A stretch of DNA of 57,907 nt from Macrostomum lignano (lineage: Eukaryota). This document shows, piece after piece, positions 6,401-51,480 of the stretch. The notes beneath the pieces were generated by a model, which was not told where the DNA came from, searched no databases, and saw only the letters and a program-made list of their open reading frames with translations. The stretch covers positions 1 through 57,907 of the forward strand of contig NIVC01002924.1 of NCBI GenBank assembly GCA_002269645.1. Reading direction: 5' to 3'. The position numbers and the translations under genes were made by a program. The stretch's first letter is position 1, and each line of letters begins with the position of its first letter.

Positions 6401-14287
<7,887 letters not shown>

Positions 14288-15584
14288 CTAGCCGAGCTAA
14301 ACTCGCAGCTCAGCTATTTTTGGTGGCGCGGGAGTGCAGAGTTTTGAGCAGCTCCAGTACGGTATGTCAGCTGCATTGACACGCATATATATACGAGCTA
14401 CAGTTAACTCGTGCCTTGTGCTCAGCTGTGCTCAGCCGGACTGCCGGCAACCCAAAAAACTTTTGGTGTATTCATACATACATAATCCTCAAATCTCGTC
14501 CCCCCGACTCACCCAGTTCAAACTGACTCGTCTCCCCAGTGCCCACCGCCCCAGCCACCACCAACTCAGCCAGGTAGGGAGGCGGCCTGCCTGGGGACGA
14601 GAGGTCCGGCCAAGCGCCATCTCTTCCCCTCGGCGTACCCCCGTACGGCAGCCTCACTACTCAGCAATATCTTGTCCCAACTGTCCCCACCCCTGCCGCC
14701 ACTCCGCGCACTCAGCGCGGGAGCCTGTGCTGGGAAAATCGATTCTCACCTCACCTCAAGTCTGATCCCCACTCCCCCTAGCGGCCCAGGTCTCCCCCCT
14801 CTGTCCAACAACCATTCTCCCTTCTCGATTTCTCCCAACTCTTCACCAGGTACCCGCTCCCCCCGTGAGTCGTTCAAAGACTGACTGACGACTGACCCGG
14901 AGCCGGCGATCTCAGGCGCGCGTGTGTGTTGCAGTTGCTACGGGCAACCAAAACAGCTGATCCGAGGGGCTTTCTAATAGGGCTGCCGCTATACAGAGGG
15001 GGGCGGAGCTTTCTAGCGCATCAAGAAAAAAAGCATGGCTTTCGGGACGGCCTATCAGGCGGGCAAGAGTTCCCCTCCTCTCTCTGTCTGTCTCTTCTCC
15101 CATCGCTGACAGCTGAGCATCCGAGGCCCCGCTTCGGCCTCCGCTGCAGGATTCGCTTCACTTAGCAGCAGCTCTGCAGTCATTCCTCCCCTTCATTGTC
15201 AGGCCTCAGAAGTAGACGGGTTGTCAAGCAAATATCTAGCTGCTAAACTACTCATGTGACTGAGTCTACTGACAGTGTGATAAAAAGTTGATGCGTACCT
15301 GCTCTGATATTGAAAGAGTATCTAAATTTAAATCAGCATTGTGTGAAGCGATCTGGGAAGCAGACATGCTGCAGACTTGCTAAGCCGCAGAAAGGGCAAA
15401 GAATGCATTTCTAGACACTAAATTTAGCGCTCGAGGGCCGTGTTTGACTGCAGTAATAAAACTAATGAGCAGTGCTATTTTTAGCTGCAACACAATTGTC
15501 TTGCATAGTACAACTGCTACCTGTCTGACTACAGAGCTTGACGCAATTCAAATCACTTTACAGGTATGTATATACTGTGCCATC

Positions 15585-17745
15585 CTCACTGCCATCTCTA
15601 GTCTGTGCCATCCTCACTGCCATCTCCGTTTTCTGTGCCATCCTCACTGCCATCTCTAGTCTGTGCCATCCTCACTGCCATCTCCGTTTTCTGTGCCATC
15701 CTCACTGCCATCTCTGCATTCTGTGCCATCCTCACTGCCATCTCCGTTTTCTGTGCCATCCTCACTGCCATCTCTAGTCTGTGCCATCCTCACTGCCATC
15801 TCTGTAGTCTGTGCCATCCTCACTGCCATCTCTAGTCTGTGCCATCCTCACTGCCATCTCTAGTCTGTGCCATCCTCACTGCCATCTCTAGTCTGTGCCA
15901 TCCTCACTGCCATCTCTAGTCTGTGCCATCCTCACTGCCATCTCCGTTTTCTGTGCCATCCTCACTGCCATCTCTGCATTCTGTGCCATCCTCACTGCCA
16001 TCTCCGTTTTCTGGGCCATCCTCACTGCCATCTCTAGTCTGTGCCATCCTCACTGCCATCTCCGTTTTCTGTGCCATCCTCACTGCCATCTCTGCATTCT
16101 GTGCCATTCTCACTGCCATCTCTGTATTCTGTGCCATCCTCACTGCCATCTCTAGTCTGTGCCATCCTCACTGCCATCTCTGTAGTCTGTGCCATCCTCA
16201 CTGCCATCTCTAGTCTGTGCCATCCTCACTGCCATCTCTAGTCTGTGCCATCCTCACTGCCATCTCTAGTCTGTGCCATCCTCACTGCCATCTCTGCATT
16301 CTGTGCCATCCTCACTGCCATCTCCGTTTTCTGTGCCATCCTCACTGCCATCTCTAGTCTGTGCCATCCTCACTGCCATCTCTGTAGTCTGTGCCATCCT
16401 CACTGCCATCTCCGTTTTCTGTGCCATCCTCACTGCCATCTCTAGTCTGTGCCATCCTCACTGCCATCTCTAGTCTGTGCCATCCTCACTGCCATCTCTA
16501 GTCTGTGCCATCCTCACTGCCATCTCTAGTCTGTGCCATCCTCACTGCCATCTCTAGTCTGTGCCATCCTCACTGCCATCTCTAGTCTGTGCCATCCTCA
16601 CTGCCATCTCTAGTCTGTGCCATCCTCACTGCCATCTCTGTTCTGTGCCATCCTCACTGCCATCTCCGTTTTCTGTGCCATCCTCACTGCCATCTCTAGT
16701 CTGTGCCATCCTCACTGCCATCTCTGTAGTCTGTGCCATCCTCACTGCCATCTCCGTTTTCTGTGCCATCCTCACTGCCATCTCTAGTCTGTGCCATCCT
16801 CACTGCCATCTCCGTTTTCTGTGCCATCCTCACTGCCATCTCTGCATTCTGTGCCATCCTCACTGCCATCTCCGTTTTCTGTGCCATCCTCACTGCCATC
16901 TCTAGTCTGTGCCATCCTCACTGCCATCTCTGTAGTCTGTGCCATCCTCACTGCCATCTCTAGTCTGTGCCATCCTCACTGCCATCTCTAGTCTGTGCCA
17001 TCCTCACTGCCATCTCTAGTCTGTGCCATCCTCACTGCCATCTCCGTTTTCTGTGCCATCCTCACTGCCATCTCCGTTTTCTGTGCCATCCTCACTGCCA
17101 TCTCTAGTCTGTGCCATCCTCACTGCCATCTCTGTAGTCTGTGCCATCCTCACTGCCATCTCCGTTTTCTGTGCCATCCTCACTGCCATCTCTAGTCTGT
17201 GCCATCCTCACTGCCATCTCTGTATTCTGTGCCACCCTCACTGCCATCTCTAGTCTGTGCCATCCTCACTGCCATCTCTGTATTCTGTGCCATCCTCACT
17301 GCAATCTCTGTAGTCTGTGCCATCCTCACTGCCATCTCTGTAGTCTGTGCCATCCTCACTGCCATCTCTGTATTCTGTGCCATCCTCACTGCCATCTCTA
17401 GTCTGTGCCACCCTCACTGCCATCTCTAGTCTGTGCCATCCTCACTGCCATCTCTGTATTCTGTGCCATCCTCACTGCCAATCTATAGTCTGTGCCATCC
17501 TCACTGCCATCTCTGTAGTCCCATCCTCACTGCCATCTCTGTATTCTGTGCCATCCTCACTGCCATCTCTAGTCTGTGCCACCCTCACTGCCATCTCTAG
17601 TCTGTGCCATCCTCACTGCCATCTCTGTATTCTGTGCCATCCTCACTGCAATCTCTGTAGTCTGTGCCATCCTCACTGCAATCTCTGTAGTCTGTGCCAT
17701 CCTCACTGCCATCTCTGCATTCGGTGCCATCCTCACTGCCATCTC
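15585..17745. repeat. 28/30-bp minisatellite (CTGTGCCATCCTCACTGCCATCTCTAGT and variants), about 2.1 kb
   Basis: Tandem units seen directly; source of all the LCHPHCH/MPSSLPS ORFs. Confidence 0.95.
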
Positions 17746-18109
17746 CTACAAGCCATCTACAAGCATATATGCATGCATTGCTACCTCACCGCCGCGTACA
17801 CTGAATACATGCAAGTCTGTCCATTGTTCCACTGCCTATTATTGAAGAAAGATTGATCTAAAAAGCTGAGCAATGCACAAAAGCGCAATGTTTCCTGGTT
17901 GATAAGGACAATAAACGGAGTTTGTGGCACAGAGAGACAAGAGGGTAAGAAATGACAACCTGTCAAAAGAAGTGGGACAAAGAATGCTTCAGTATAATTG
18001 AGTCAGTCTTTATATCAGAGACTGATGGAGGAGCAAACTATTGTGAATCATAGCACTGACTATTGTATCCAGCATTTGAAAGACTTGTAAACAAATGTGT
18101 GAATTGATC

Positions 18110-18650
18110 TTTATGCTCAAGTTAAGCATTCATGACCAAGTTATGCTCAAATTAAGCATTCATGACCAATTTATGCTCAAGTTAAGCATCTATGACCAAT
18201 TTATGCTCAAGTTAAGCATCTATGACCAATTTATGCTCAAGTTAAGCATCTATGACCAATTTATGCTCAAGTTAAGCATCTATGACCAATTTATGCTCAA
18301 GTTAAGCATTATGACCAATTTATGCTCAAATTAAGCATTCATGACCAAGCTATGCTCAAGTTAAGCATTCATGACCAAGTTATGCTCAAGTTAAGCATTC
18401 ATGACCAAGTTATGCTCAAATTAAGCATTAAGACCAATTTATGCTCAAGTTAAGCATTCATGACCAAGTTATGCTCAAATTAAGCATTCATGACCAAGTT
18501 ATGCTCAAATTAAGCATTCATGACCAAGCTATGCTCAAGTTAAGCATTCATGACCAAGTTATGCTCAAATTAAGCATTCATGACCAAGTTATGCTCAAAT
18601 TAAGCATTCGTGACCAAGTTATGCTCAAATTAAGCTTTATGACCAACTTC
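18110..18650. repeat. 30-bp minisatellite (TTATGCTCAAGTTAAGCATTCATGACCAAG)
   Basis: Tandem units seen directly, with a degenerate tail to about 18800. Confidence 0.92.
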
Positions 18651-19294
18651 TGATCAAGCTGAACATCAATAACCAATATATGTGCATGTTAAGCATCTAT
18701 GACCAATCTCTGATGAAAATGAACCTCTTTGACCAATTTCTGATCAATCATCAAACTGAACATATGACCAATTTCTGATCAAACTGAGAGTTTATGACTA
18801 ACTCGTGCAAGAACGAGCATCTAAGAGTCTAAGATCAAATAAACTGACAAATCGTTTTCTTATCATTAAGTACGATTATGATTGACAACTGTCACTTTGA
18901 GAAGAATTATAAAAAACGTTGCGTTTAAAAATGTACGCTTATATTCAAAATGTTTAGGAAAGCCAAAGGTATTTAAGGCTTCAAGTTATAAATCAATGAA
19001 TTTATTTCGACAAAAACACACAATGCTCAGCCGCATATGACGGGTGCAATGCTTTCAATAATGATCTTTGGCTACCCCATAAATCACAACATGCAACACG
19101 CTAAGCACCAAAACACAGCAATTCACATTTCCACTAATAATTAGGATTTCTAGACAGAGACAGCAGTGAGGTACACAAGTGTATTCAAATGGTAGCTAAA
19201 AAGTACATTGTTTTTCACTAGGATAAACAACTATGTAGGAATATTTTGGATAAACAATAAAGGTTAACTAGCCAAAGCATTGCTGAGTCAGTGC

Positions 19295-19591
19295 TCATCT
19301 CCGTTTCTTTTTCTGAGCAGCGGCCAGATGCTGCTTCCTGTTGTTGGACACGTGGCCGGCTGTTGCGGTTGCCGGCCGAGTTCCGGCTGTCGAGTTGCCG
19401 ACGCTGCCGCCGTACTCGGCTTCGTCGGCTTCGCCCATCGAGGCGGTGTCGCTGGAAGCGGCTGGCGGCAGGCAGAACAGAGCCAGCAGGCAGGCCAGCT
19501 GGAACAGGGCGCCTATGAGCAGCGCCCGGTCCGACAGCAGCTCGTACCAGGTGGCTGGCGGGATGAACAGCGAGCTGTCCTGGTCTGGCAT
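19295..19591 (-). CDS. MANBAL: MANBAL / UPF0239 small single-pass membrane protein (98 aa)
   Basis: IPPATWYELLSDRALLIGALFQLACLLALFCLP parallels the remembered MANBAL motif ([29 protein letters not shown]), with a basic KKKRR C-terminus; intronless CDS. Confidence 0.85.
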   Translation of the reverse strand: MPDQDSSLFIPPATWYELLSDRALLIGALFQLACLLALFCLPPAASSDTASMGEADEAEYGGSVGNSTAGTRPATATAGHVSNNRKQHLAAAQKKKRR

Positions 19592-19659
19592 GGCTGCAAC
19601 ATGCGGCGGCGGATAGGGCTGGACTATCGCTCAGTACTGGGATGGTGCGAGGGGTGTCT

Positions 19660-20000
19660 TGGATGCTACAGGCAGGGTAGAGGGACGGGGTGTCCTGGAT
19701 GCCACAGTCAGGGTAGCGGGACGGGGTGTCCTGGATGCCACAGTCAGGGTAGCGGAAAGGGTGTCCTGGGTGCTACAGGCAGGATAGCGGGAAGGGTGTG
19801 CTGGGTGCCACAGGCAGGGTAGCGGGAAGGATGTGCTGGGTGCTACAGGCAGGATAGCGGGAAGGATGTGCTGGGTGCCACAGGCAGGATAGCGGGAAGG
19901 GTGTGCTGGGTGCCACAGGCAGGGTAGCGGGAAGGATGTGCTGGGTGCTACAGGCAGGATAGCGGGAAGGATGTGCTGGGTGCCACAGGCAGGGTAGCAG
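19660..20000. repeat. 35-bp minisatellite (AGGATGTGCTGGGTGCTACAGGCAGGATAGCGGGA)
   Basis: Tandem units between the METTL25B and MANBAL coding regions. Confidence 0.9.
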
Positions 20001-20503
20001 GAACAGGAAGGGAGAGCCAAGGCTTCAATGCAAGAATCAATTGAAAATAAGACTGGGCCTAGCGGTGCTACCAGACTCATGCGAGCGCAGAGTCTACATG
20101 TTGAAGAGGAGATAAGAATGGGAAGAAAAATCAATGAAAGCCAGAGAGAAATTTTGCGCATTGAAACTACGAAAGGATTTTCACAGTCCAAAGCTTTGTT
20201 GATAAAAGAATTCTCCCTGTTTGAGGCGGGGGTTGGGTGGGTCAAAAACCCGGAAAATTCAATACTCTGCATTTCTCCGCGGCTCTCAATAGGGCCTGAT
20301 TGACAGCTAAGGGTGTATATATAAAGTACAAGCAAGTTTCAGGGCCCATACGCGGTAAGAGTAGTATATTCAAATAGTCAATAATTAATGAATATGACTT
20401 CATAAAAGCTTCAGATTACCGAAGAAATTCTGGACTATATTTATTACAAAATGCAATTTGAAATGATAAATTTTGCATGAATCAGGTAGTTCACTGCATA
20501 ATC

Positions 20504-21927
20504 CTAGGACTTCTTGGCTACAATAGCCAAGCATCTGGGCGACAGTTCGGGCGAGAACAGCTGCAACAGCTCCGCAGCTACTCCCCTCTCTCTAAGGTAC
20601 AACTGAAAGTCAACTAAAAGTACAAACTCCAAAACCGGCCTCAGCAGAGTCTGCAATCGATAAACCAGCTCAGCAAGGCGAAGGTCCCCAGTTCGAGTCT
20701 CGGTCTCCCAGACAGTCAGAAGGCGACCCCGAATTGTCGGCCAGTCGACGTCGCCGTTGTCATGACGACCGGCTGCCTCGTCCAGAGCGGCCAGGTAGGC
20801 GGCGAAATCTCCATCGGCTGCAGGCGGGCGGATGCGCCGCAGCAGGCGGTCGGCGTCAGGGCGGGCGGCCAGCTGCAGCGCGGCCCGGCGCAGGGTGGCG
20901 TCAATTCGAGCCTGCAGCCTCGTCCTGCCCGTTGCTCCTAGGGGCAGCAGCAGCAGAGTCTCCAGACGCTCCTGGCAGGCCAGCCGACGGGCCGGGACGC
21001 TGGCGAATAGGCGGGCCAAGCCGGGCAGGCGCGACAAAGCGGCGCTGACTGGCGCTGAGTGCGCGGACTTGTGATAGCAGCAGGGCAGGCAGATCAGGCT
21101 GCGCAGCCGCTGGCTGGAGGCGAACAAATCCACCAGAGTGTTGGACAGGGAGCCGCAGGCGTGCTGGCCCAGCGCCAACACCGGACTCGAATTGTCCATC
21201 CCGGCTGACAGGCGGTCCAACGCCGACTCAACTGCCAGGCGACAGTCGCGGCCGGGCCGCAGCTCCAGGCACAGCGTGGCGTCGGCATCGGACGAGGCCA
21301 ACAGGCGAGCGTCGCGATCGATCAGCAGTGTCCGAGTGTCCGGAAACTGGCTGGACAGCAGGCGGCCGAACCGGCCGACTCCGGCGCCAACGTCCAGCAG
21401 GATTAGGGATGATGATGATGATGAGGAATCGCCGGAGCCACCAGCCAGGCCGGACTCGCCGATGTAGGCCAGCAGCCTCTCGGCCTCGTGCCGCTTCTTT
21501 GGCCGCAGCCGGCGGTACTGGTTTGACGCTGAGCGGGATGGTGGCGGCGGATTAAAGACGGCCGTCTGCTCGGCGATGTCGGACAGGCAGGAGAACAGCT
21601 CGTCAAGGTGCAGCTGCGTCCCGATGCTCTCGGCTGGCAGGGGCCTACCGGACACAGCGGCATTCAGACAGGCGTCGATCGCTTCAATCAGGCAGTCGGC
21701 GTCCTCCGCGGCCACGCGACCTCGCCAGGGCCGCACCAGCAGCGCGTCTGTCCAAGCGAAATCAACCGACCACCACAGCTGGTCGAGCAGGCGGTCCAGC
21801 CGGTCCAGAAGGCCAGACAGGCGCGGACTGATGCCTGCGAGCGATGACTGGAATGTGTGCGCAGCGGCGGGATTCGGCTGTTTGTACCTTTTGCTTCTTT
21901 GGTATAGCGATGAGCAGCGACTACTAG
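20504..21927 (-). CDS. METTL25B: METTL25B/RRNAD1-like SAM-dependent methyltransferase (Methyltransf_32 family); one long exon, start codon not identified
   Basis: RLRPKKRHEAERL, LLDVGAGVG (motif I), GQHACGSLS, LPCCYHK, RRLACQ and FSPELSPRCLAIVAKK match remembered RRNAD1 motifs (VRPKKQHE, GLHACGDLS, LSPELSPRN). The only in-frame ATG lies downstream of motif I, so the 5' coordinate is provisional. Confidence 0.82.
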
Positions 21928-21954
21928 CTACAAGGCGGAGTGACAGATTCACTC

Positions 21955-22340
21955 CTGAGACAGGGGACTGAGTCTCACTCCTGAGACACGGGAGTGAGTC
22001 TCAATCCTGAGACAGGGGACTGAGTCTCAATCCTGAGACACGGGAGTGAGTCTCAATCCAGAGACAGGGGACTGAGTCTCAATCCTGAGACAGGGGACTG
22101 AGTCTCAATCCTGAGATAGGGGACTGAGTCTCAATCCTGAGACAGGGGAGTGAGCCTCAATCCAGAGACAGGGGAGTGAGTCTCAATCCAGAGACAGGGG
22201 AGTGAGTCTCAATCCTGAGACAGGGGAGTGAGTCTCAATCCTGAGACAGGGGAGTGAGTCTCAATCCTGAGACAGGGGAGTGACAGTCTCAATCCTGAGA
22301 CAGGGAGTGACAACTAAACCCGGGACAGGGGAGTGACAGC
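21955..22340. repeat. 26-bp minisatellite with an internal inverted repeat (GAGTCTCAATCCTGAGACAGGGGACT)
   Basis: Each unit contains GTCTCA-atcc-TGAGAC. Confidence 0.9.
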
Positions 22341-22664
22341 TAAACCGAACAAAACAAACAAGAAAACAAATCAGGACTCAGTAACGCAGCATCGGTAATA
22401 ACAGATGAAATGCACAATTGACTGTATATTTATAACTTACACAATAGAATTGAATTTCGCAAGAATGTACTTTAACGAACCAACTGAGCAAATGCCACAA
22501 TTATACGAGCAACAGACAGACTTGAAAATCGCATATTTGTACCAAGTTGAGTGCAATTTTTAAAAAATATGTAAATGAATTGATCAAACATCTGCACTCT
22601 TCAACATCACTAAACAAAATAGCAATAATCGTAAGTTCTTCAGAGTTCAGTCTCACCAATAATA

Positions 22665-22972
22665 TTGCGTAACTGATTTCAGTCTCACCAATAATATTGC
22701 TTCACTGATTTCAGTCTCACCAATAATATTGCGTCACTGATTTCAGTCTCACCAATAATATTGCGTCACTGATTTCAGTCTCACTAATAATATTGCGTCA
22801 CTGATTTCAGTCTCACCAATAATATTGCGTCACTGATTTCAGTCTCACCAATAATATTGCGTCACTGATTTCAGTCTCACCAATAATATTGCGTCACTGA
22901 TTTCAGTCTCACCAATAATATTGCGTCACTGATTTCAGTCTCACCAATAATATTGCGTCACTGATTTCAGGG
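22665..22972. repeat. 32-bp minisatellite (GATTTCAGTCTCACCAATAATATTGCGTCACT) just 3' of the NSUN4 stop
   Basis: About 9-10 tandem units. Confidence 0.92.
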
Positions 22973-23018
22973 TCACCCGACAACCCGACAACACAAGCCA
23001 CAGTCTCAATCTTCATCT

Positions 23019-26000
23019 TCAATCCACCCGTTTCAATTTGCACACAAAGCTCGGTCCATAATTAGCCAGCAGGTGCGGCAGCACCAGCAGCCCCACTTGG
23101 CGGCTCTGCACCCGGCAGCCGGCGCCAGCCAGCAGGCTGGCCAGCGGCCGCAGGTCCACCAGCTTGAATGCCGGCTGCAGTTTAGCCAGAGCAGACAGCA
23201 CAACAGCCTCATTCTGTGCTGGTGACATTGTGCAGGTTGAGTAGACCAAGCTGGCTCCCGGACGGCAGGCCGCGGCGCCGGCTAGAAGCAGCTGGAGCTG
23301 ACTGCAGGTGAATTTGTACATAAATAGATATTGATTGACAAAAATATCCCAATAACTCTACTCAAAGTAGTGCAAAACGCAAAATAATAATATTACGTAT
23401 TGGGCAGGCCGACTCTTTCTTTGCTGCGACGCCCGCTAAACAGGTCGGCCTCGGGATCGTTCAACGAGTGTCGATCTCCCGAGCAGGTGGGATCAACTAG
23501 AACGCGATCGAATGAGTTCAGGGGATAAGCGCCACTGTTTAGCGCGTTGGCGTACAGCTGCGAAACTGAGCAGCCGGCTAGCACTGACGGCGGCACGTGC
23601 GAGCTTAGCAGGCGGGCGAGGCGGCTGGATCTGGGGATGGCGGGCGCATCAGCTTGAGTAGTGAGATCGGCGTGTGAGCAGATAGCTACTCAGATCAGTG
23701 TGTGAGCAGATAGCTACTCAGATCAGTGTGTGAGCGAGCAGATGGCTACTCAGATCAGTGTGTGAGCAGATAGCTACTCAGATCAGTGTGTGAGCAGATA
23801 GCTACTCAGATCAGTGTGTGAGCAGATAGCTACTCAGATCAGTGTGTGAGCAGATAGCTACTCAGATCAGTGTGTGAGCAGATAGCTACTCAGATCAGTG
23901 TGTGAGCAGATAGCTACTCAGATCAGTGTGTGAGCTAGCAGATAGCTACTCAGATCAGTGTGTGAGCTAGCAGATAGCTACTCAGATCAGTGTGTGAGCT
24001 AGCAGATAGCTACTCAGATCAGTGTGTGAGCTAGCAGATAGCTACTCAGATCAGTGTGTGAGCAGATAGCTACTCAGATCAGTGTGTGAGCAGATAGCTA
24101 CTCAGATCAGTGTGTGAGCAGATAGCTACTCAGATCAGTGTGTGAGCAGATAGCTACTCAGATCAGTGTGTGAGCAGATAGCTACTCAGATCAGTGTGTG
24201 GGCTAGCAGATAGCTACTCAGATCAGTGTGTGAGCAGATAGCTACTCAGATCAGTGTGTGAGCAGATAGCTACTCAGATCAGTGTGTGAGCAGATAGCTA
24301 CTCAGATCAGTGTGTGAGCAGATAGCTACTCAGATCAGTGTGTGAGCAGATAGCTACTCAGATCAGTGTGTGAGCAGATAGCTACTCAGATCAGTGTGTG
24401 AGCTAGCAGATAGCTACTCAGATCAGTGTGTGAGCTAGCAGATAGCTACTCAGATCAGTGTGTGAGCTAGCAGATAGCTACTCAGATCAGTGTGTGAGCA
24501 GATAGCTACTCAGATCAGTGTGTGAGCAGATAGCTACTCAGATCAGTGTGTGAGCAGATAGCTACTCAGATCAGTGTGTGAGCAGATAGCTACTCAGATC
24601 AGTGTGTGAGCAGATAGCTACTCAGATCAGTGTGTGGGCTAGCAGATAGCTACTCAGATCAGTGTGTGAGCAGATAGCTACTCAGATCAGTGTGTGAGCA
24701 GATAGCTACTCAGATCAGTGTGTGAGCAGATAGCTACTCAGATCAGTGTGTGAGCAGATAGCTACTCAGATCAGTGTGTGAGCAGATAGCTACTCAGATC
24801 AGTGTGTGAGCAGATAGCTACTCAGATCAGTGTGTGAGCTAGCAGATAGCTACTCAGATCAGTGTGTGAGCTAGCAGATAGCTACTCAGATCAGTGTGTG
24901 AGCTAGCAGATAGCTACTCAGATCAGTGTGTGAGCAGATAGCTACTCAGATCAGTGTGTGAGCAGATAGCTACTCAGATCAGTGTGTGAGCAGATAGCTA
25001 CTCAGATCAGTGTGTGAGCAGATAGCTACTCAGATCAGTGTGTGAGCAGATAGCTACTCAGATCAGTGTGTGGGCTAGCAGATAGCTACTCAGATCAGTG
25101 TGTGAGCAGATAGCTACTCAGATCAGTGTGTGAGCAGATAGCTACTCAGATCAGTGTGTGAGCAGATAGCTACTCAGATCAGTGTGTGAGCAGATAGCTA
25201 CTCAGATCAGTGTGTGAGCAGATAGCTACTCAGATCAGTGTGTGAGCAGATAGCTACTCAGATCAGTGTGTGAGCAGATAGCTACTCAGATCAGTGTGTG
25301 AGCTAGCAGATAGCTACTCAGATCAGTGTGTGGGCTAGCAGATAGCTACTCAGATCGGTGTGAGCAGATAGCTACTCAGATCAGTGCGAGCATAGCACAC
25401 TCAATGAGGTTAAGAAAGCAAAACACACAAGGCAGCGCAGACCTAGCGGAGGACTTGTCCAAGCATAGCATTTGTCCTGGCAGTGCCTGCTGCAGCAGAC
25501 AATAGGCCTTTGACCCGGGAGCGGAGCACAGGTCTAGCACCGAGTCGCCATCGCCTGGGCAAAGGGCCAAGGCGGCGGCCACAGAGCCGAGATCCATTGG
25601 CAAATAGGGGCACAGGCCGGTGGTTTGATCTGGCTTTGGCCGGGGGAACCACCTGTGTGTGTGTAAGGTTCTTTAATCATTTGCCTGCCACTGGAATTCT
25701 AGCTTGACTAGCAGAGTTTTGTGTATAGCTAATGTACTTTTTCCTCCTAAATTTCTTCATTGTGCGTGTTAGAACCAACAGAACGGGTTGCTTCTACAGA
25801 ATGGGTTGCTTCTACAGAATGGGTTGCTTCTACAGAATGGGTTGCTTCTACAGAATGGGTTGCTTCTACAGAATGGGTTGCTTCTACAGAATGGGTTGCT
25901 TCTACAGAATGGGTTGCTTCTACAGAATGGGTTGCTTCTACAGAATGGGTTGCTTCTACAAAATGGGTTGCTTCTACAAAATGGGTTGCTTCTACAGAAT

Positions 26001-28867
26001 GGGTTGCTTCTACAGAATGGGTTGCTTCTACAGAATGGGTTGCTTCTACAGAATGGGTTGCTTCTACAGAATGGGTTGCTTCTACAGAATGGGTTGCTTC
26101 TACAGAATGGGTTGCTTCTACAGAATGGGTTGCTTCTACAACAACAACAAAATACGCTGTCATGATGGTAAAAGTCAGCGTCACAGGGCGCGCTTCATGG
26201 CTTGGGCGCGAACAAAGGCCGCGCCACCGGCAGTGTCCGGGGCGCCGGCGTCAGCCAGCAGACAGTCGACATAACGCCGAGTTCGCGCTTGACCTCGCCG
26301 GTAGGGTGCCTGCAGCGTGAGCAGCAGCACCTCCTGCACCGGCTGTGGGCAGTACGACTCGGCGCGGATGAGATGGCCTGCGAGCTGGAGTCGCCGACGG
26401 CGCAGTAGATCACTTGGACGTGGCAGGCCAGCGCGGCGATAGAGCTTCTACAGAATGGGTTGCTTCTACAGAATGGGTTGCTTCTACAGAATGGGTTGCT
26501 TCTACAGAATGGGTTGCTTCTACAAAATGGGTTGCTTCTACAAAATGGGTTGCTTCTACAAAATGGGTTGCTTCTACAGAATGGGTTGCTTCTACAGAAT
26601 GGGTTGCTTCTACAGAATGGGTTGCTTCTACAGAATGGGTTGCTTCTACAGAATGGGTTGCTTCTACAAAATGGGTTGCTTCTACAAAATGGGTTGCTTC
26701 TACAGAATGGGTTGCTTCTACAGAATGGGTTGCTTCTACAGAATGGGTTGCTTCTACAGAATGGGTTGCTTCTACAGAATGGGTTGCTTCTACAGAATGG
26801 GTTGCTTCTACAGAATGGGTTGCTTCTACAGAATGGGTTGCTTCTACAGAATGGGTTGCTTCTACAGAATGGGTTGCTTCTACAGAATGGGTTGCTTCTA
26901 AAGAATGGGCTGCATTTTTCAAGACAATTGCTTAATAATATACCTTATTAGATTATTTAAGAACCATTTAGGTTATTCTAAAGCTAAAATAAGCCTTATA
27001 CATTTCAAAATTTTTAACTTCACCTGTCACTGCCATCCGGCTTCATCAGCTGATGCTGCACGCTAGATGGGAAGGCGAACACCTGCAGAGTGGGCGAAAT
27101 GGTCTGGTCACTAGGCAGCCACAGCTCGGGATCAGCGGGATCAATCAGACTACACGAGTCATCGGTTGAGCCGTCGTGAACAGCGCTATCGGACAGGGCC
27201 AGAGAGGCCCGGCCGCGAGGGTCCATCTCGGTGATGAACTCGGTGGCAGGCAGAAATTCGTTCAAGTTCGATCGGGAATCCGCAGCTGCGGCTGAGGAGG
27301 CGGCGAATGTGGCCGCTTCGAGGCGATCGTAGCTGAGCACTTTTAACTCGGCTGAACGCTCGGAGAGCTGATGAGGCTGACCAGCTGCCGGTGATTCGAA
27401 CGATTCCTCGGCGCTCTCCGGCCAAGCCTGCAAACGGCGCCTCCAATCGGGCGCCAAATCTTCGGCGCCTAAGGTAAGAAGCCGCGTCTCTGCGGCAGCC
27501 TGCAATTAAAATTGGCTATCAATTGGTTTAGGGCTACTATAAGTAGCAACATGAGAAAATCGAATCAGCAATCAGATCAAACTGAATCAGCAATCAGATC
27601 AAACTGAATCAGCAATCAGATCAAACTGAATCAGCAATCAGATCAAACTGAATCAGCAATCAGATCAAACTGAATCAGCAATCAGATCAAACTGAATCAG
27701 CAATCAGATCAAACTGAATCAGCAATCAGATCAAACTGAATCAGCAATCAGATCAAACTGAATCAGCAATCAGATCAAACTGAATCAGCAATCAGATCAA
27801 ACTGGATCAGCAATCAGATCAAACTGAATCAGCAATCAGATCAAACTGAATCAGCAATCAGATCAAACTGAATCAGCAATCAGATCAAACTGAATCAGCA
27901 ATCAGATCAAACTGAATCAGCAATCAGATTAAACTGAATCAGCAATCAGATCAAACTGAATCAGCAATCAGATCAAACTGGATCAGCAATCAGATCAAAC
28001 TGAATCAGCAATCAGATCAAACTGAATCAGCAATCAGATCAAACTGAATCAGCAATCAGATCAAACTGAATCAGCAATCAGATCAAACTGAATCAGCAAT
28101 CAGATCAAACTGAATCAGCAATCAGATCAAACTGAATCAGCTATCAGATCCAATTGAATCAGCAATCACATCCAATTAAATCAGCAATCAGATCCAATTA
28201 AATCAGCAATCAGATCAAACTAAATCAGCAATCAGAACAAACTGAATCAGCAATCAGAACAAACTGAATCAGCAAATGAACAGATTAATTATCTGATTGA
28301 CACAGAATGCATTGCTTGATTCACATAGAATCGAGTACCTGATAACCTGATTCACATATAATCATATAATGCATTACCTGATTCACACAGAATGCATTAC
28401 CTGATTCACACAGAATGCATTACCTGATTCACACAGAATGCATTACCTGATTCACACAGAATGCATTACCTGATTCACACAGAATGCATTACCTGATTCA
28501 CACAGAATGCATTACCTGATTCACACAGAATGCATTACCTGATTCACACAGAATGCATTACCTGATTCACATAGAACCGGTTCAGCACAGCGACATGCCT
28601 AGGCTGGGACAGCAGAGCCAGACGGATTGATGGCCAGAGCTCAGGCCCAAACTCCGGCCCATAGATCTGGTCAAAGTGGGCCAGAGCTCTACGACCCCAC
28701 TGGGTCAGGAGGGCGCCAGTGGCTGTGGGTGGCTGGTCAAACATACGCTGGACAGCCCAACGTGGTTGCAACTCAGCATCCTGATGCTGCTGCTGTTTCT
28801 TTGCCTGCTTTCGATTGCTGGCAGAAGACATTGCAACAGTGGAGTGCACTGAGCGCCTGGCTGCCAT
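23019..28867 (-). CDS. NSUN4: NSUN4-like mitochondrial RNA m5C methyltransferase, 5 exons, 502 aa predicted
   Basis: Exons 28867-28562, 27499-27024, 25652-25443, 23630-23397 and 23301-23019 all have GT-AG boundaries and matching phases (0,2,2,2), totalling 1509 nt. Motifs LWPSIRLALLS, MDLGSVAAALAL, VLDLCSAPGSK, DRVLVDPTC, DRHSL, YSTC and ANYGPSFVCKLKR follow NSUN4. Confidence 0.92.
23680..25385. repeat. 28/32-bp minisatellite (GCAGATAGCTACTCAGATCAGTGTGTGA) with a 436-bp higher-order period, filling NSUN4 intron 3
   Basis: A rare GGGCTAG variant recurs at about 24200, 24636 and 25072. Confidence 0.95.
25785..26900. repeat. 18-bp minisatellite (AGAATGGGTTGCTTCTAC) split in two by a LINE fragment
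   Basis: Arrays at about 25785-26140 and 26444-26900 share the same unit. Confidence 0.93.
26141..26443 (-). mobile_element. 5'-truncated RTE-like non-LTR retrotransposon (ORF2 C-terminus, 3' UTR and (TTG)n tail)
   Basis: A minus frame missing from the ORF track (26444-26181) reads LYRRAGLPRPSDLLRRRRLQLAGHLIRAESYCPQPVQEVLLLTLQAPYRRGQARTRRYVDCLLADAG, the RRLxxAGHxxR...P...RGxxR..Y/WxD pattern of RTE ORF2 ends. A microsatellite tail follows, and GCTTCTACA is repeated on both flanks. Confidence 0.78.
27560..28275. repeat. 22-bp minisatellite (AATCAGCAATCAGATCAAACTG) in NSUN4 intron 1
   Basis: Tandem units seen directly. Confidence 0.94.
28370..28576. repeat. 23-bp minisatellite made of the NSUN4 exon 1/intron 1 junction
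   Basis: The minus-strand unit TTCTGTGTGAATCAG|GTAATGCA equals the last 15 nt of the exon (one mismatch) plus the first 8 nt of the intron; about 8-9 copies. Confidence 0.9.
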
Positions 28868-31083
28868 TATGCACAAGTAACTGCGATGGTGATAATGGCT
28901 TGCTAGGGCTGCAGTGCTTGGCATTTTCCTGATGATAATAGTGATTTAATAACATAAATAATGTAAAGTATATTATCTTTCTTAGAAATTCAGAAAAAAT
29001 AATTCAAGAACATTATCTCAAATTACTAACACTTATTTGTTTGAAGTCAATTCTAGAATATTGAATAATAGACAATGAAAAATAGGGGGTTTCTCAATCT
29101 AAAGTCAATTTGACACTAGGGCACTCAAGAGTAAGAAACTAGGAGCCCAGGAGAGATAAAGGAATAACCAATTAGAAAGTAGCAAGGCAGAAAAGATAAA
29201 CATTTTATGCTAAGTAAATAATTAAGAATTGGATTGAGTTCAATAAGGTAAATAGAAAGAAGAAATCATGAATAGGTAAACAAAATATTGGTTAAGAATA
29301 TAATATAAAAGTTGCAACACTTAGTAAAAATGGTCTTAGCCTAATAATACAGAGAGCTTTTGACTTATTTACTTAGACTTAGCAATAGGGCAATCCCAGA
29401 ATGGGAAAGTATGAAAACCTATTATACTAATCCTTTTATATAGATAGTTCAATAGACCTAGATTTTTAAAAAAGCCTATCTAATTAGATGCTATTATAAT
29501 TATTTATATATGTTATATATTACAATTCTACAATTCTATAGTTGTTCTAGATATAGTTATAGATTAGATACCTGTTATAGTTATATAACAATATATAGTT
29601 ATATTTAGTTATATATCTATTATATCTAGCTATATATCTAGAAACCTTTTAAAAAATCATTTCTCTTTTTATTTTCAAATTTTAAATGCACTTTCTTTCT
29701 TTTGATTTGTTAATTGCTACTTATTTATATAAATTATTATTTCTTTTCTTATGTTTTTAATGCTTTCTTTTCATTTTATTCATTTAATTTTTATGCTTTA
29801 TGCTATGTATCCCAATACACTTTTTGGTACTTAGTTGATTGATTTGCAATATATCCACAAAGGCTACCTTGTTACCTAATTCGACTGGCTTTTTTAGTCA
29901 GGTATTGCACATTTACGACTATGATTATAATTAAGTATATATTAGACTTAATCCTAAAACTATATTTAATTGGACTAATAAAACAACTTCTTTATATAAA
30001 AACATTTAATATTATTTTTAAAATATAGTATACTTGATCTTTTTAACACCTTAGAACAAAGCCTTTTGGATTTCTAATATTAGGCCTAATATTAGATTTT
30101 CTAATATAGTTTAGTTGATCCTTTTGACACTATAGACTAAAGACTATCAGATTTTTAATGCAATTTTTTTAAATTCCATTATACTAAAAATGGTTTGTTA
30201 GTATCTATCTATCTATGTGATCAATTAGAGAAAAATTACTATTAAAGTTGGTATATATTAATATTATAGGGCCTACTTTTATATAATATAGTATTTTCAT
30301 TTGTTTTTTATTCTTTGGCATTTGATCTACAAACAAATTTATTTCATAATGTCTTGGTACATATAGAACATGATCCTGACTAGGCTTATCTCAAGAGAAA
30401 GAAACATCACTATCTTATTGCAACTGATCAGTTGCAGCTGCAACCTGCAATGGAGTTTGAGTGACTGGACCATGCATGAGGACTAAGGGGGGGGGGTATT
30501 AGAAGTTGTATATTCATTGTTTTAGAAAATCAAAAATCAGTCGCTTAGTGCGTTTTTTATTCGTAAAACACAGATTTAATTCACCAGAATTAAATATCCC
30601 AGTGAGTAAATGTGAATGTCCAGGGTAGGCCAGGCCACAACCACCAGTACAGTAGTAGGTAGAGTCAAGGCTGTTAAAAAATTCAAGTAAACCTATCCAC
30701 AAAGAAAACAACAAGTCGTATAACAGGCTTTAAAATAATGATAATAACGAGAAAATGAATAAATTATTAATAATATTAATAATAACATCACTATCTTCAT
30801 ATATAGATGGCTCTTTAATAAATTTTTAGCAAGTAAATAATTTTCTTATAAAATGCCATGTTAAAAGGGGAATAAAGGTATTAGTTAGTTAAACAAAATT
30901 TACTCTCATCATTTCCTAGACCATTTCCATTATTTTTTTAGCTAAATCTACTTTAGATAAACTATTAAACTCATAATTTTTCTTTACTGTAATTATATTT
31001 TATTGTCCGAGATTCGTACTCTTAGGTTTTTACTAACAGTAACATAAAAGGAAATTTACGTACAAATCTTTATAGTTTATAGA

Positions 31084-31157
31084 TTTCCAGAAATTTCTTG
31101 AAAGTTTCTATTGATTCATCGAGTGGAAAGTTCTAGAAATTTTACCGTCTATATAAA
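31084..31157 (+). promoter_or_regulatory. Heat-shock promoter: two HSEs and a TATA box
   Basis: tTTCcaGAAatTTCttGAAa (31084-31103; four perfect alternating nGAAn units), gGAAagTTCtaGAAa (31125-31139; three units) and TATATAAA (31150-31157), about 120 nt upstream of the sHSP ATG. Confidence 0.88.
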
Positions 31158-31278
31158 CAAGAGACCAGAACCCCAGAAATTTCAAGTCTGTGGAAGCCAC
31201 AAAGAAACCCAATTGCAAGCAAAGCACTCTTTCTCAACCGACTACAAGCAAGCTTCTGATTACTCCATTGCCGACAGC

Positions 31279-32031
31279 ATGTCGCTCTGGATTGCACCAA
31301 GCACGTTTTCGCGAACGCTGCCATTGGTCTCCATGACCGGCCTAGACGACTGGCTGCTGCCACAATACGATCCTTTGGTGCAGCTCCTAAGGAATAGAGG
31401 CACGAGGCGGCCGCGAATGTGGAACTATTCGATTGACCTGCACGGGTTCTCGCCCGAAGAAGTTTCTGTCAAGCGGGAGAAGCAAAAGTTGCGCATTGTG
31501 GCTCGGCACGAGAGCGGAGAAGACGTCACCGAGGTGAAGCGCACGGTTGAGCTGCCGGATGAAGTTGATGCCGAGAAACTGAACAGCCGCTTCTCCAGCG
31601 ACGGCGTTCTGCTCTTGCATGCGCCGTACAAGGAGCAGAAGCCAAAGCAGAGGCAGGCGCAGAAGCGTCATCAAGAAACGTCGGTCTGGGACGAGCTGCG
31701 CGACCTTCTCCGAGGCCAGGATCTGAAATCGGAGGCCAACGGTCAAATCGTGGAATCGAAAGACGGCGCCAAGCGATTCAAAGCTGAGCTGTCTGTCCGC
31801 GAGTTCAAGCCGGACGAAATTCGCGTCCGCCAGCAGGACGACTGCATCGTGGTCGAGGCCGAGCACAAGGAGGAGAGCGGCGGCCAGAAGATGCACAGGC
31901 GACTGGAGAGGCTCTACCAGCTGCCCGGGGGCGCCAAGCTGGACCAGGTTGTCAGCAAGCTCAGCCACGACGGTCGTCTCTGCATCGAAGCCCCGATGGA
32001 GGCACCGCCGGCTAGGAAGCAGCCGCAGTGA
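31279..32031 (+). CDS. Small heat-shock protein with two alpha-crystallin domains (p40/major egg antigen type), 250 aa
   Basis: Domain 1 is IDLHGFSPEEVSVK...RTVELPDEVDAEKLNSRFSSDGVLLLHAP; domain 2 is LSVREFKPDEIRV...YQLPGGAKLDQVVSKLSHDGRLCIEAP. The first ATG is at 31279; the listed TTG start at 31111 lies upstream of the TATA box. Confidence 0.92.
   Translation: MSLWIAPSTFSRTLPLVSMTGLDDWLLPQYDPLVQLLRNRGTRRPRMWNYSIDLHGFSPEEVSVKREKQKLRIVARHESGEDVTEVKRTVELPDEVDAEKLNSRFSSDGVLLLHAPYKEQKPKQRQAQKRHQETSVWDELRDLLRGQDLKSEANGQIVESKDGAKRFKAELSVREFKPDEIRVRQQDDCIVVEAEHKEESGGQKMHRRLERLYQLPGGAKLDQVVSKLSHDGRLCIEAPMEAPPARKQPQ

Positions 32032-37311: not shown

Positions 37312-51480
<14,169 letters not shown>

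What the first reader, a model, noticed from the sequence alone, without database searches (positions are those of the whole stretch)
19295..28867. Candidate trans-spliced operon: NSUN4 - METTL25B - MANBAL
Three conserved housekeeping genes lie head-to-tail on the minus strand. The gaps between coding regions are about 1.1 kb and 0.9 kb, and much of each is minisatellite. MANBAL has an acceptor 2 nt before its ATG, and METTL25B needs an upstream splice. SL trans-splicing and polycistronic transcription are established in flatworms. Two RNA-methyltransferase-fold genes are adjacent; NSUN4 is a known mitochondrial rRNA m5C enzyme and METTL25B is poorly characterised, so co-transcription would hint at a shared mitoribosome role.
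Basis: inference. Interest (0 to 1): 0.7.

Follow-up and report, generated by a model that had tools for sequence, protein, structure and literature searches.

The report
Probable spliced-leader operon in Macrostomum
Three housekeeping genes (NSUN4, METTL25B, MANBAL) lie head-to-tail in an already annotated Macrostomum lignano scaffold and fit the published sequence rules for a trans-spliced operon, a gene layout reported for about 15% of this worm's genes, so it is a plausible but ordinary and still unproven example.

Summary
The window is the whole public scaffold NIVC01002924.1 of Macrostomum lignano (Mlig_3_7). Its deposited gene calls are NSUN4 (28924-23019), METTL25B/RRNAD1-like (21847-20504) and MANBAL (ATG 19591 to 19295), all on the minus strand. 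The gaps are 1171 and 912 nt, of which 61% and 39% is minisatellite.

METTL25B has no in-frame ATG before codon 252. Its deposited 5'-partial CDS starts exactly after TTCCAG, the only match in that gap to the published trans-acceptor motif YTNCAG. The M. lignano spliced leader ends in ATG, and that ATG falls in frame there. The resulting N-terminus lines up with those of orthologues. Spliced-leader (SL) trans-splicing of METTL25B, with the start codon donated by the SL, is therefore strongly inferred.

MANBAL has the only YTNCAG of its gap 2 nt before its ATG, but its deposited 5' ends are inconsistent. Repeat-adjusted gaps (about 450 and 560 nt) pass the published limit of under 1 kb.

Co-transcription is untested. 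The published annotation gives the three genes three different transcriptional-unit names. No reads could be reached. Two parasitic flatworms do not share the arrangement.

Verdict: an ordinary new member of a known kind. The idea of a shared mitoribosome role remains speculation.

The parts
28925..31110 (.). AT-rich (26% GC) gene-free spacer between NSUN4 (minus strand) and a divergent plus-strand HSP20 ORF. It is the candidate promoter region for the cluster.
   Evidence: No deposited gene lies between 28924 and 31847. That it holds a promoter is inference.
23019..28924 (-). NSUN4 orthologue (BOX15_Mlig012351g1 family), 521 aa, complete CDS. Five coding exons at about 28924-28562, 27502-23, 25654-25436, 23632-23396 and 23303-23019. 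Introns 1-3 are filled with minisatellites.
   Evidence: Exon ends are approximate, taken from tblastn.
22429..22434 (-). TATAAA, the only poly(A)-signal-like hexamer in gap 1. It is the probable NSUN4 3'-end signal and is followed by a T-rich stretch.
   Evidence: Its function is inferred.
22646..22977 (.). 32-bp minisatellite (10.4 copies) in the NSUN4 3' UTR / gap 1.
   Evidence: The array is 489 nt long in the homeologous scaffold.
21949..22336 (.). 26-bp minisatellite (14.9 copies) in gap 1, just upstream of the METTL25B acceptor.
   Evidence: The array is 666 nt long in the homeologous scaffold.
21848..21853 (-). TTCCAG, the inferred SL trans-splice acceptor of METTL25B. It is the only YTNCAG in the 1171-nt gap. 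The exon starts at 21847, and the SL's terminal ATG is in frame with it.
20504..21847 (-). METTL25B/RRNAD1-like methyltransferase (BOX15_Mlig009456g1 family). Single exon, 447 codons plus stop, with no ATG of its own.
20440..20445 (-). AATAAA, the only canonical poly(A) signal in gap 2. It is the probable METTL25B 3'-end signal, 59 nt after the stop codon.
19652..20003 (.). 35-bp minisatellite (10 copies) in gap 2.
   Evidence: The array is 862 nt long in the homeologous scaffold.
19594..19599 (-). TTGCAG, the candidate SL acceptor of MANBAL. It is the only YTNCAG in gap 2. The exon would start at 19593, 2 nt before the ATG. The SL ATG would be out of frame with MANBAL.
   Evidence: Use of this site is not shown.
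19295..19591 (-). MANBAL (UPF0239) ORF, 98 aa (BOX15_Mlig011651g1 family). It is deposited as a 91-aa 5'-partial CDS at 19570-19295.
19001..19006 (-). AATAAA, the probable MANBAL poly(A) signal.

Best explanation
This is a same-strand gene cluster of Macrostomum lignano that is processed by spliced-leader trans-splicing and is probably, at least in part, an operon.

Proposed mechanism:
- Transcription starts in the AT-rich spacer upstream of NSUN4 and runs through the minisatellite-laden gaps (inferred).
- NSUN4 mRNA is cleaved and polyadenylated after TATAAA at 22434-22429 (inferred).
- The 35-nt SL is spliced onto TTCCAG|TCA at 21848/21847. Its terminal AUG becomes the METTL25B start codon, giving M-SSLAGISPRL... 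(strongly inferred).
- METTL25B mRNA ends after AATAAA at 20445-20440 (inferred).
- MANBAL is then capped by the SL at TTGCAG|CC, 2 nt before its own AUG (plausible, not shown).

The NSUN4-to-METTL25B link is the stronger one. After removing repeats, only about 190 nt separate the poly(A) signal from the acceptor. The METTL25B-to-MANBAL link is weaker, at about 490 nt.

My estimates: SL-donated start for METTL25B about 0.85; at least one pair co-transcribed about 0.55; all three co-transcribed about 0.3-0.35.
For: - The window is NIVC01002924.1 of M. lignano Mlig_3_7.
- The SL is CGGTCTCTTACTGCGAAGACTCAATTTATTGCATG. The trans-acceptor motif is [T/C]TNCAG. The published operon rule requires the same orientation, an SL-spliced downstream gene and a repeat-adjusted distance under 1 kb. 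About 15% of genes fall in such operons (PMC8629364).
- METTL25B's frame is closed upstream at 22003 and has no in-frame ATG until codon 252.
- The deposited CDS is 5'-partial and starts exactly after the only YTNCAG of the gap.
- Gene 5' ends in that annotation were cut at peaks of SL-trimmed reads (PMC5730564).
- The same CDS start is deposited for three homeologous copies that carry TTCCTG instead of TTCCAG. This is what multi-mapping SL-trimmed reads would produce and what a sequence-based predictor would not.
- With one added Met, the N-terminus is collinear with 13 METTL25B homologues, so no upstream coding exon is missing.
- Flatworm SLs all end in AUG, and this AUG can serve as the initiator (citing Cheng et al. 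2006).
- Each gap has one poly(A)-type hexamer followed by one YTNCAG.
- Repeat-adjusted gaps are 451 and 560 nt in the window and 430 and 561 nt in the homeologue, while raw gaps differ by 1.35- to 1.56-fold.
- The upstream neighbour is divergent (HSP20 on the plus strand), so NSUN4 heads the run.
Against: - No SL-bearing reads, long reads or 5'-cap data could be reached.
- The three deposited names have different transcriptional-unit prefixes, and each is 'g1'. Published RNA-seq therefore did not assemble a joint precursor.
- About 60% of SL-spliced genes in this species are not in operons.
- MANBAL's deposited 5' ends differ between homeologues (6 nt upstream of the ATG against 21 nt inside the ORF) although the sequence is identical. 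They therefore do not come from a shared SL peak.
- At TTGCAG| the SL AUG would open an out-of-frame 27-codon ORF that overlaps the MANBAL start (read from the sequence shown).
- Gap 2's adjusted length lies between the two published distance modes.
- The arrangement is absent around NSUN4 in Opisthorchis and Taenia.
Confidence: 0.55

Rival explanations
1. The three genes are independent transcription units. METTL25B, and perhaps MANBAL, have their own promoters inside the gaps. Each makes a short outron and is SL trans-spliced as a monocistronic gene.
For: - Different transcriptional-unit names apply to all three genes (naming rule).
- Most SL genes are not in operons.
- The gaps contain AT-rich unique DNA (33% GC over 309 nt and 40% GC over 500 nt) that could hold promoters.
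- In the homeologous scaffold, METTL25B copies 2 and 3 sit behind kilobases of minisatellite with only about 110 nt of shared upstream sequence, yet they are still annotated.
Against: - After the NSUN4 poly(A) signal, only about 190 nt of non-repeat DNA precedes the METTL25B acceptor.
- Both gaps pass the published operon criterion.
- Transcriptional units are known to break in repeats.
Confidence: 0.35
2. Only NSUN4 and METTL25B form a two-gene operon. MANBAL is a conventional capped gene whose transcript starts a few nucleotides upstream of its ATG.
For: - The MANBAL 5' ends in the deposited annotation are not at an AG and differ between identical homeologous sequences.
- The SL AUG would be out of frame with the MANBAL start.
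- Gap 2 is the longer of the two after repeat removal.
Against: - The only YTNCAG in 912 nt lies 2 nt before the ATG.
- The odd 5' end 'GCAGCC' in the homeologue could come from the SL 3' end TTGCATG aligning onto genomic TTGCAG (my inference, untested).
Confidence: 0.2
3. METTL25B is not SL-dependent. An unannotated upstream cis exon supplies the ATG and is spliced to 21847.
For: - The acceptor could in principle serve cis-splicing.
Against: - The deposited model, built from RNA-seq and SL peaks, has no such exon.
- The N-terminus is already full length relative to homologues.
- The upstream 1.1 kb is mostly minisatellite plus the NSUN4 3' UTR.
Confidence: 0.05

Closest known systems
SL trans-spliced operons of Macrostomum lignano (Wudarski et al. 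2017, PMC5730564; Ustyantsev & Berezikov 2021, PMC8629364)
   Same: Same species and the same assembly. The genes share orientation. The acceptors match YTNCAG. The intergenic DNA is repeat-laden but falls under 1 kb once repeats are subtracted. The genes are conserved housekeeping genes. Operons of two or three genes make up the bulk of the catalogue (75% and 18%).
   Different: This particular trio is not named in the main text of any paper in the searchable library, nor in the supplementary files I searched. The deposited names place the genes in three transcriptional units rather than one.
Caenorhabditis elegans SL2-type operons
   Same: The upstream mRNA's 3'-end formation is followed by trans-splicing of the downstream cistron. 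Housekeeping genes predominate.
   Different: M. lignano has a single SL and no specialised downstream SL. The raw spacers here are 0.9-1.2 kb with minisatellites, against about 100 nt in C. elegans. No Ur-type element was tested.
Flatworm SL 3'-terminal AUG used as the initiator methionine (Cheng et al. 2006, cited in PMC12582326)
   Same: The SL ends in AUG. It is in frame with an ORF that lacks any start codon of its own.
   Different: That work was in Schistosoma. Here the case rests on frame, annotation and N-terminal collinearity, not on protein data.
Mitoribosomal L9-like gene followed by NSUN4 in Opisthorchis felineus and Taenia crassiceps (seen here)
   Same: NSUN4 lies in a tight same-strand pair (75 and 166 nt) in flatworms that have SL trans-splicing.
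   Different: The partner is a mitoribosomal L9-like gene placed upstream, not METTL25B or MANBAL downstream. No L9-like sequence is present in the window.

Membership tests
M. lignano SL operon (criteria of PMC8629364) | Immediately adjacent genes in the same orientation, with no opposite-strand gene between them | tested here: met
   The deposited calls on the scaffold list only NSUN4, METTL25B and MANBAL between 28924 and 19295, all on the minus strand.
M. lignano SL operon (criteria of PMC8629364) | Repeat-adjusted intergenic distance under 1 kb | tested here: met
   1171-720 = 451 nt and 912-352 = 560 nt, measured CDS to CDS. Measured from poly(A) signal to acceptor, the distances are about 190 and 490 nt. 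The homeologue gives 430 and 561 nt.
M. lignano SL operon (criteria of PMC8629364) | Downstream gene METTL25B carries the SL (SL-bearing reads at its 5' end) | tested here: inconclusive
   No reads were accessible. The indirect evidence is strong. The 5'-partial deposited CDS starts at TTCCAG|. The gene has no ATG of its own. The SL ATG is in frame. The same boundary is deposited in AG-less homeologues.
M. lignano SL operon (criteria of PMC8629364) | Downstream gene MANBAL carries the SL | tested here: inconclusive
   There is a unique YTNCAG 2 nt before the ATG. However, the deposited 5' ends do not coincide with it and disagree between identical homeologous sequences.
Operon in the strict sense | One primary transcript from one promoter spans the genes | not testable with these tools
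   No RNA data could be reached. The deposited names give three different transcriptional-unit prefixes, which argues weakly against a single transcript.
NSUN4 (mitochondrial rRNA m5C methyltransferase) | RsmB/F-type SAM methyltransferase core with both catalytic Cys motifs, and NSUN4 proteins as the closest named relatives | tested here: met
   Pfam PF01189 matches two exons. DPTCSGD and YSTCTMS are present in the exon translations. The best named hits are NSUN4 of flatworms, fish, crab and oyster, with E-values from 1e-42 to 1e-26.
METTL25B / RRNAD1 | Methyltransf_32 domain above Pfam's cut-off, and closest named relatives METTL25B rather than other METTLs | tested here: met
   PF13679 scores 40.2 bits against a cut-off of 27. 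The top named representatives are RRNAD1/METTL25B, of 411-463 aa. The alignment has 21 invariant columns. No formal tree against METTL25 was made.
MANBAL (UPF0239) | A short single-pass membrane protein that matches PF06783 above the cut-off | tested here: met
   28.0 bits against a cut-off of 25.4, covering residues 10-97.

The most novel reading that the evidence does not exclude
The linkage is functional. METTL25B, an uncharacterised methyltransferase with predicted mitochondrial targeting in humans (PMC5518231), would be co-expressed with NSUN4 because both act on the mitoribosome. Flatworms would repeatedly place NSUN4 in operons with mitoribosome genes: a mitoribosomal L9-like gene in Neodermata and METTL25B in Macrostomum. 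In addition, METTL25B expression would depend entirely on trans-splicing, because the SL supplies its only start codon.
Probability: 0.1. Interest if true: 0.5.

Novelty: new member of a known kind. Interest (0 to 1): 0.2.

Why it matters
If confirmed, this would be one more of the roughly 10,000 M. lignano genes assigned to SL operons. It shows two points already made in the literature: minisatellites inflate intercistronic spacers, and the SL's AUG can serve as a start codon.

Its modest added value has two parts. First, it is a clean case of a conserved enzyme gene (METTL25B) that has no start codon of its own. Second, it gives a weak guilt-by-association hint that METTL25B might act in mitochondria alongside NSUN4. 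That hint is not backed by conserved synteny.

Tried and rejected
1. Direct transcript evidence was not obtainable. Exact-protein look-ups found nothing for MANBAL or for METTL25B with the SL-donated Met. The 90% clusters hold only the two genome-derived members each.

2. Gene-level SL or operon flags could not be found in the literature. The gene IDs appear in no searchable paper. Neither the IDs nor the human gene names appear in the held supplements of Wudarski 2017, Grudniewska 2016 or Grudniewska 2018.

3. Cross-species synteny could not be properly tested.
- The word-indexed protein search found no other Macrostomum or flatworm METTL25B, even with a profile.
- The two new hits are intronless genes from unidentified metagenome or sequencing-run contigs, with no NSUN4 or MANBAL nearby.
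- NSUN4 neighbours in Opisthorchis and Taenia do not include METTL25B or MANBAL.

4. A brute-force GT-AG enumeration of the NSUN4 model gave nonsense chains. It was replaced by tblastn with the homeologous protein.

5. There is no SL copy in cis: the SL has no match in the window with up to 3 mismatches.

6. A fourth operon member was rejected. The next minus-strand gene (CDS start 13968) is 5.3 kb away, about 2.4 kb after repeat removal, and has its own cis-spliced 5' UTR intron.

7. An upstream member was rejected. The next gene upstream is a plus-strand HSP20.
Full report
**What the window is**

A search with the METTL25B-like ORF returned one cluster. It is a 447-aa [quoted passage not shown] at 98% identity.

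The exact window protein (P0004) is on record on a 57,907-bp contig, NIVC01002924.1 of assembly GCA_002269645.1 (Mlig_3_7). That contig is the window itself. The region has therefore already been annotated by Wudarski et al. 2017 (PMC5730564).

The deposited gene calls between 10.5 and 31.8 kb are as follows:

| Gene | Length | Window coordinates (minus strand) |
|---|---|---|
| RsmB/F protein (NSUN4) | 521 aa | 28924..23019 |
| Methyltransf_32 protein (METTL25B) | 447 aa | 21847..20504 |
| UPF0239 protein (MANBAL) | 91 aa | 19570..19295 |
| Unnamed protein | 429 aa | starts at 13968 |

**Checking the observation**

- Pfam confirms RsmB/F on two NSUN4 exons, Methyltransf_32 on the 482-codon open frame, and UPF0239 on the 98-aa ORF.
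- The best named relatives of the first gene are NSUN4 proteins from Opisthorchis, Poecilia, Chionoecetes, Saccostrea and Taenia.
- An exhaustive HMMER search with the second gene found 760 representatives with E-value up to 0.001. The best named ones are RRNAD1/METTL25B.
- tblastn with the homeologous NSUN4 gives five coding exons. Minisatellites fill introns 1 to 3.
- The gaps are 1171 nt (720 nt minisatellite) and 912 nt (352 nt minisatellite).
- TTGCAG|CC ATG is present before MANBAL.
- The METTL25B frame is closed by TGA at 22003 and has no in-frame ATG until codon 252.

The only correction is that the deposited NSUN4 start is 28924, not 28867.

**What the literature says about this species**

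- M. lignano has one 35-nt SL, CGGTCTCTTACTGCGAAGACTCAATTTATTGCATG.
- The motif enriched at trans-acceptors is [T/C]TNCAG.
- About 30% of genes are SL-spliced.
- About 15% of genes are assigned to operons. The rule is same orientation, an SL-spliced downstream gene, and an intergenic distance under 1 kb after subtracting repeats. The authors found that repeats inflate operon spacers (PMC8629364).
- In the Mlig_3_7 annotation, transcriptional units were cut into genes at peaks of SL-trimmed reads and at poly(A) sites. Names are a unit prefix plus .g1.g2 and so on (PMC5730564).
- All flatworm SLs end in AUG, and this AUG can act as the initiator (citing Cheng et al. 2006).

**METTL25B**

Gap 1 holds exactly one YTNCAG, TTCCAG at 21853-21848. 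The background rate in the window is 3.2 per kb per strand. The deposited CDS begins at the very next base, is flagged partial, and starts SSLAG....

Joining the SL there gives ...TTGC ATG TCA TCG..., which is in frame. With that one Met, the N-terminus aligns column for column with the N-termini of 13 homologues, so no coding exon is missing.

The homeologous scaffold NIVC01001894.1 carries three METTL25B copies in which this site reads TTCCTG. Their deposited CDSs nevertheless start at the same base. A predictor working from sequence would not do that. SL-trimmed reads that multi-map would, and the pipeline allowed up to 1000 mapping locations per read.

I therefore regard SL trans-splicing at 21847, with an SL-donated start codon, as strongly inferred (about 0.85). 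The window copy is the one that carries a working AG.

**MANBAL**

Gap 2 also holds exactly one YTNCAG, TTGCAG at 19599-19594, 2 nt before the ATG. The other evidence is mixed:

- The SL AUG would be 5 nt upstream of the MANBAL AUG and out of frame. It would open a 27-codon overlapping ORF, so translation would need leaky scanning.
- The deposited 5'-partial CDSs start at GCAGCCATG in the homeologue and at 19570 in the window. The two sequences are identical across this stretch.
- These ends therefore did not come from a common SL peak.

MANBAL's SL status stays open.

**Is it an operon?**

Evidence in favour:

- NSUN4 heads the run. Upstream lie 2.2 kb of 26% GC DNA and then a plus-strand HSP20 ORF.
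- Each gap has a single poly(A)-type hexamer (TATAAA 22434-22429; AATAAA 20445-20440) followed by a single acceptor motif.
- Repeat-adjusted gaps are 451 and 560 nt. From poly(A) signal to acceptor they are about 190 and 490 nt.
- In the homeologue the raw gaps are 1585 and 1423 nt, but the adjusted gaps are 430 and 561 nt. Only the minisatellites vary. This is the pattern described for operon spacers in PMC8629364.

Evidence against:

- The deposited names are Mlig012351.g1, Mlig009456.g1 and Mlig011651.g1.
- Most SL genes are not in operons.
- No RNA data could be reached.
- Literature supplements hold no entry for these genes.

My estimates: at least one pair co-transcribed about 0.55; all three about 0.3-0.35; independent promoters about 0.35.

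**Extent of the cluster**

The next minus-strand gene starts at 13968. It lies 5.3 kb downstream, about 2.4 kb without repeats. It has its own 5' UTR intron (GTGAGT...TTCCAG) around a 16-bp minisatellite. It falls outside the published criterion.

**The functional inference**

METTL25B remains uncharacterised. Human RRNAD1 has four concordant predictions of a mitochondrial targeting sequence but no known target (PMC5518231). Its rRNA-methylase label comes from GO annotation only (PMC8662637).

Synteny gives no support for a link:

- In Opisthorchis felineus and Taenia crassiceps, NSUN4 lies 75 and 166 nt behind a Ribosomal_L9_N gene on the same strand.
- Taenia has an opposite-strand kinase gene downstream of NSUN4.
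- Neither locus contains METTL25B or MANBAL sequence.
- The window contains no L9-like sequence.

The M. lignano trio therefore looks lineage-specific. Operon membership in SL organisms is often functionally arbitrary (established knowledge from C. elegans). The mitoribosome link stays speculative, at about 0.1.

**Verdict**

However, this is an ordinary instance of a genome-wide, published phenomenon in an already annotated scaffold, and the key claim of co-transcription is untested. The most solid new point is that METTL25B depends on the SL for its start codon.

Noticed in passing
L004:3312-28049 (Opisthorchis felineus SJOL01005732.1) and L005:3495-23685 (Taenia crassiceps JAKROA010000006.1): In both parasitic flatworms the NSUN4 orthologue sits 75 nt and 166 nt downstream of a gene with a Ribosomal_L9_N domain (mitoribosomal L9-like), on the same strand. 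This is within the 300-bp or shorter operon criterion of PMC12582326. It may be a conserved pair of two mitoribosome-related genes. It is not mentioned in that paper's main text.
   Followed up: partly
L001/L002 (NIVC01001894.1, about 175-202 kb); the unit corresponds to window 21957-17574: In the homeologous scaffold, the unit of METTL25B, 35-bp minisatellite, MANBAL and 30-bp minisatellite is tandemly triplicated, with periods of 5286 and 5280 bp. Units 1 and 2 are about 99% identical. All three MANBAL ORFs are intact, but only one is annotated. This is either a recent duplication or an assembly expansion.
   Followed up: partly
window 21849 compared with L002:4713, 9999 and 15279: The A of the METTL25B acceptor AG is a T in all three homeologous copies (TTCCTG). 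Those copies would lose the in-frame SL splice site. An upstream CAG| (AAGCAG|CCG), also in frame with the SL ATG, might substitute for it.
   Followed up: no
window 19619-19620: A second AG (GTCCAG|CCCTAT) lies 27 nt upstream of the MANBAL ATG. Splicing there would put the SL ATG in frame and add 10 residues. There is an in-frame TGA 15 nt further upstream.
   Followed up: no
window 23664-25386, 25778-26913, 27562-28275, 28368-28576 (NSUN4 introns), plus 15575-17746, 18111-18706 and others: Minisatellites with 16- to 35-bp units occupy most of the non-coding DNA, in introns as well as between genes. The first NSUN4 donor site (CAG|GTAATG) lies in the first copy of a 23-bp array, and every unit of that array repeats the donor-like sequence.
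   Followed up: partly
window 31111-32031 (+): This ORF has two HSP20/alpha-crystallin matches (E = 8e-28). It is divergent from NSUN4 across a 2.2-kb spacer of 26% GC.
   Followed up: no
window 39975-40577 (-): This exon-sized ORF matches the C-terminal part of the plexin cytoplasmic RasGAP domain (E = 2e-31).
   Followed up: no
window 14086-14250 (-): The next downstream gene (CDS start 13968, no Pfam match) has a 5' UTR intron, CAG|GTGAGT ... TTCCAG|GAC. The body of the intron is a 16-bp minisatellite (14105-14233).
   Followed up: no
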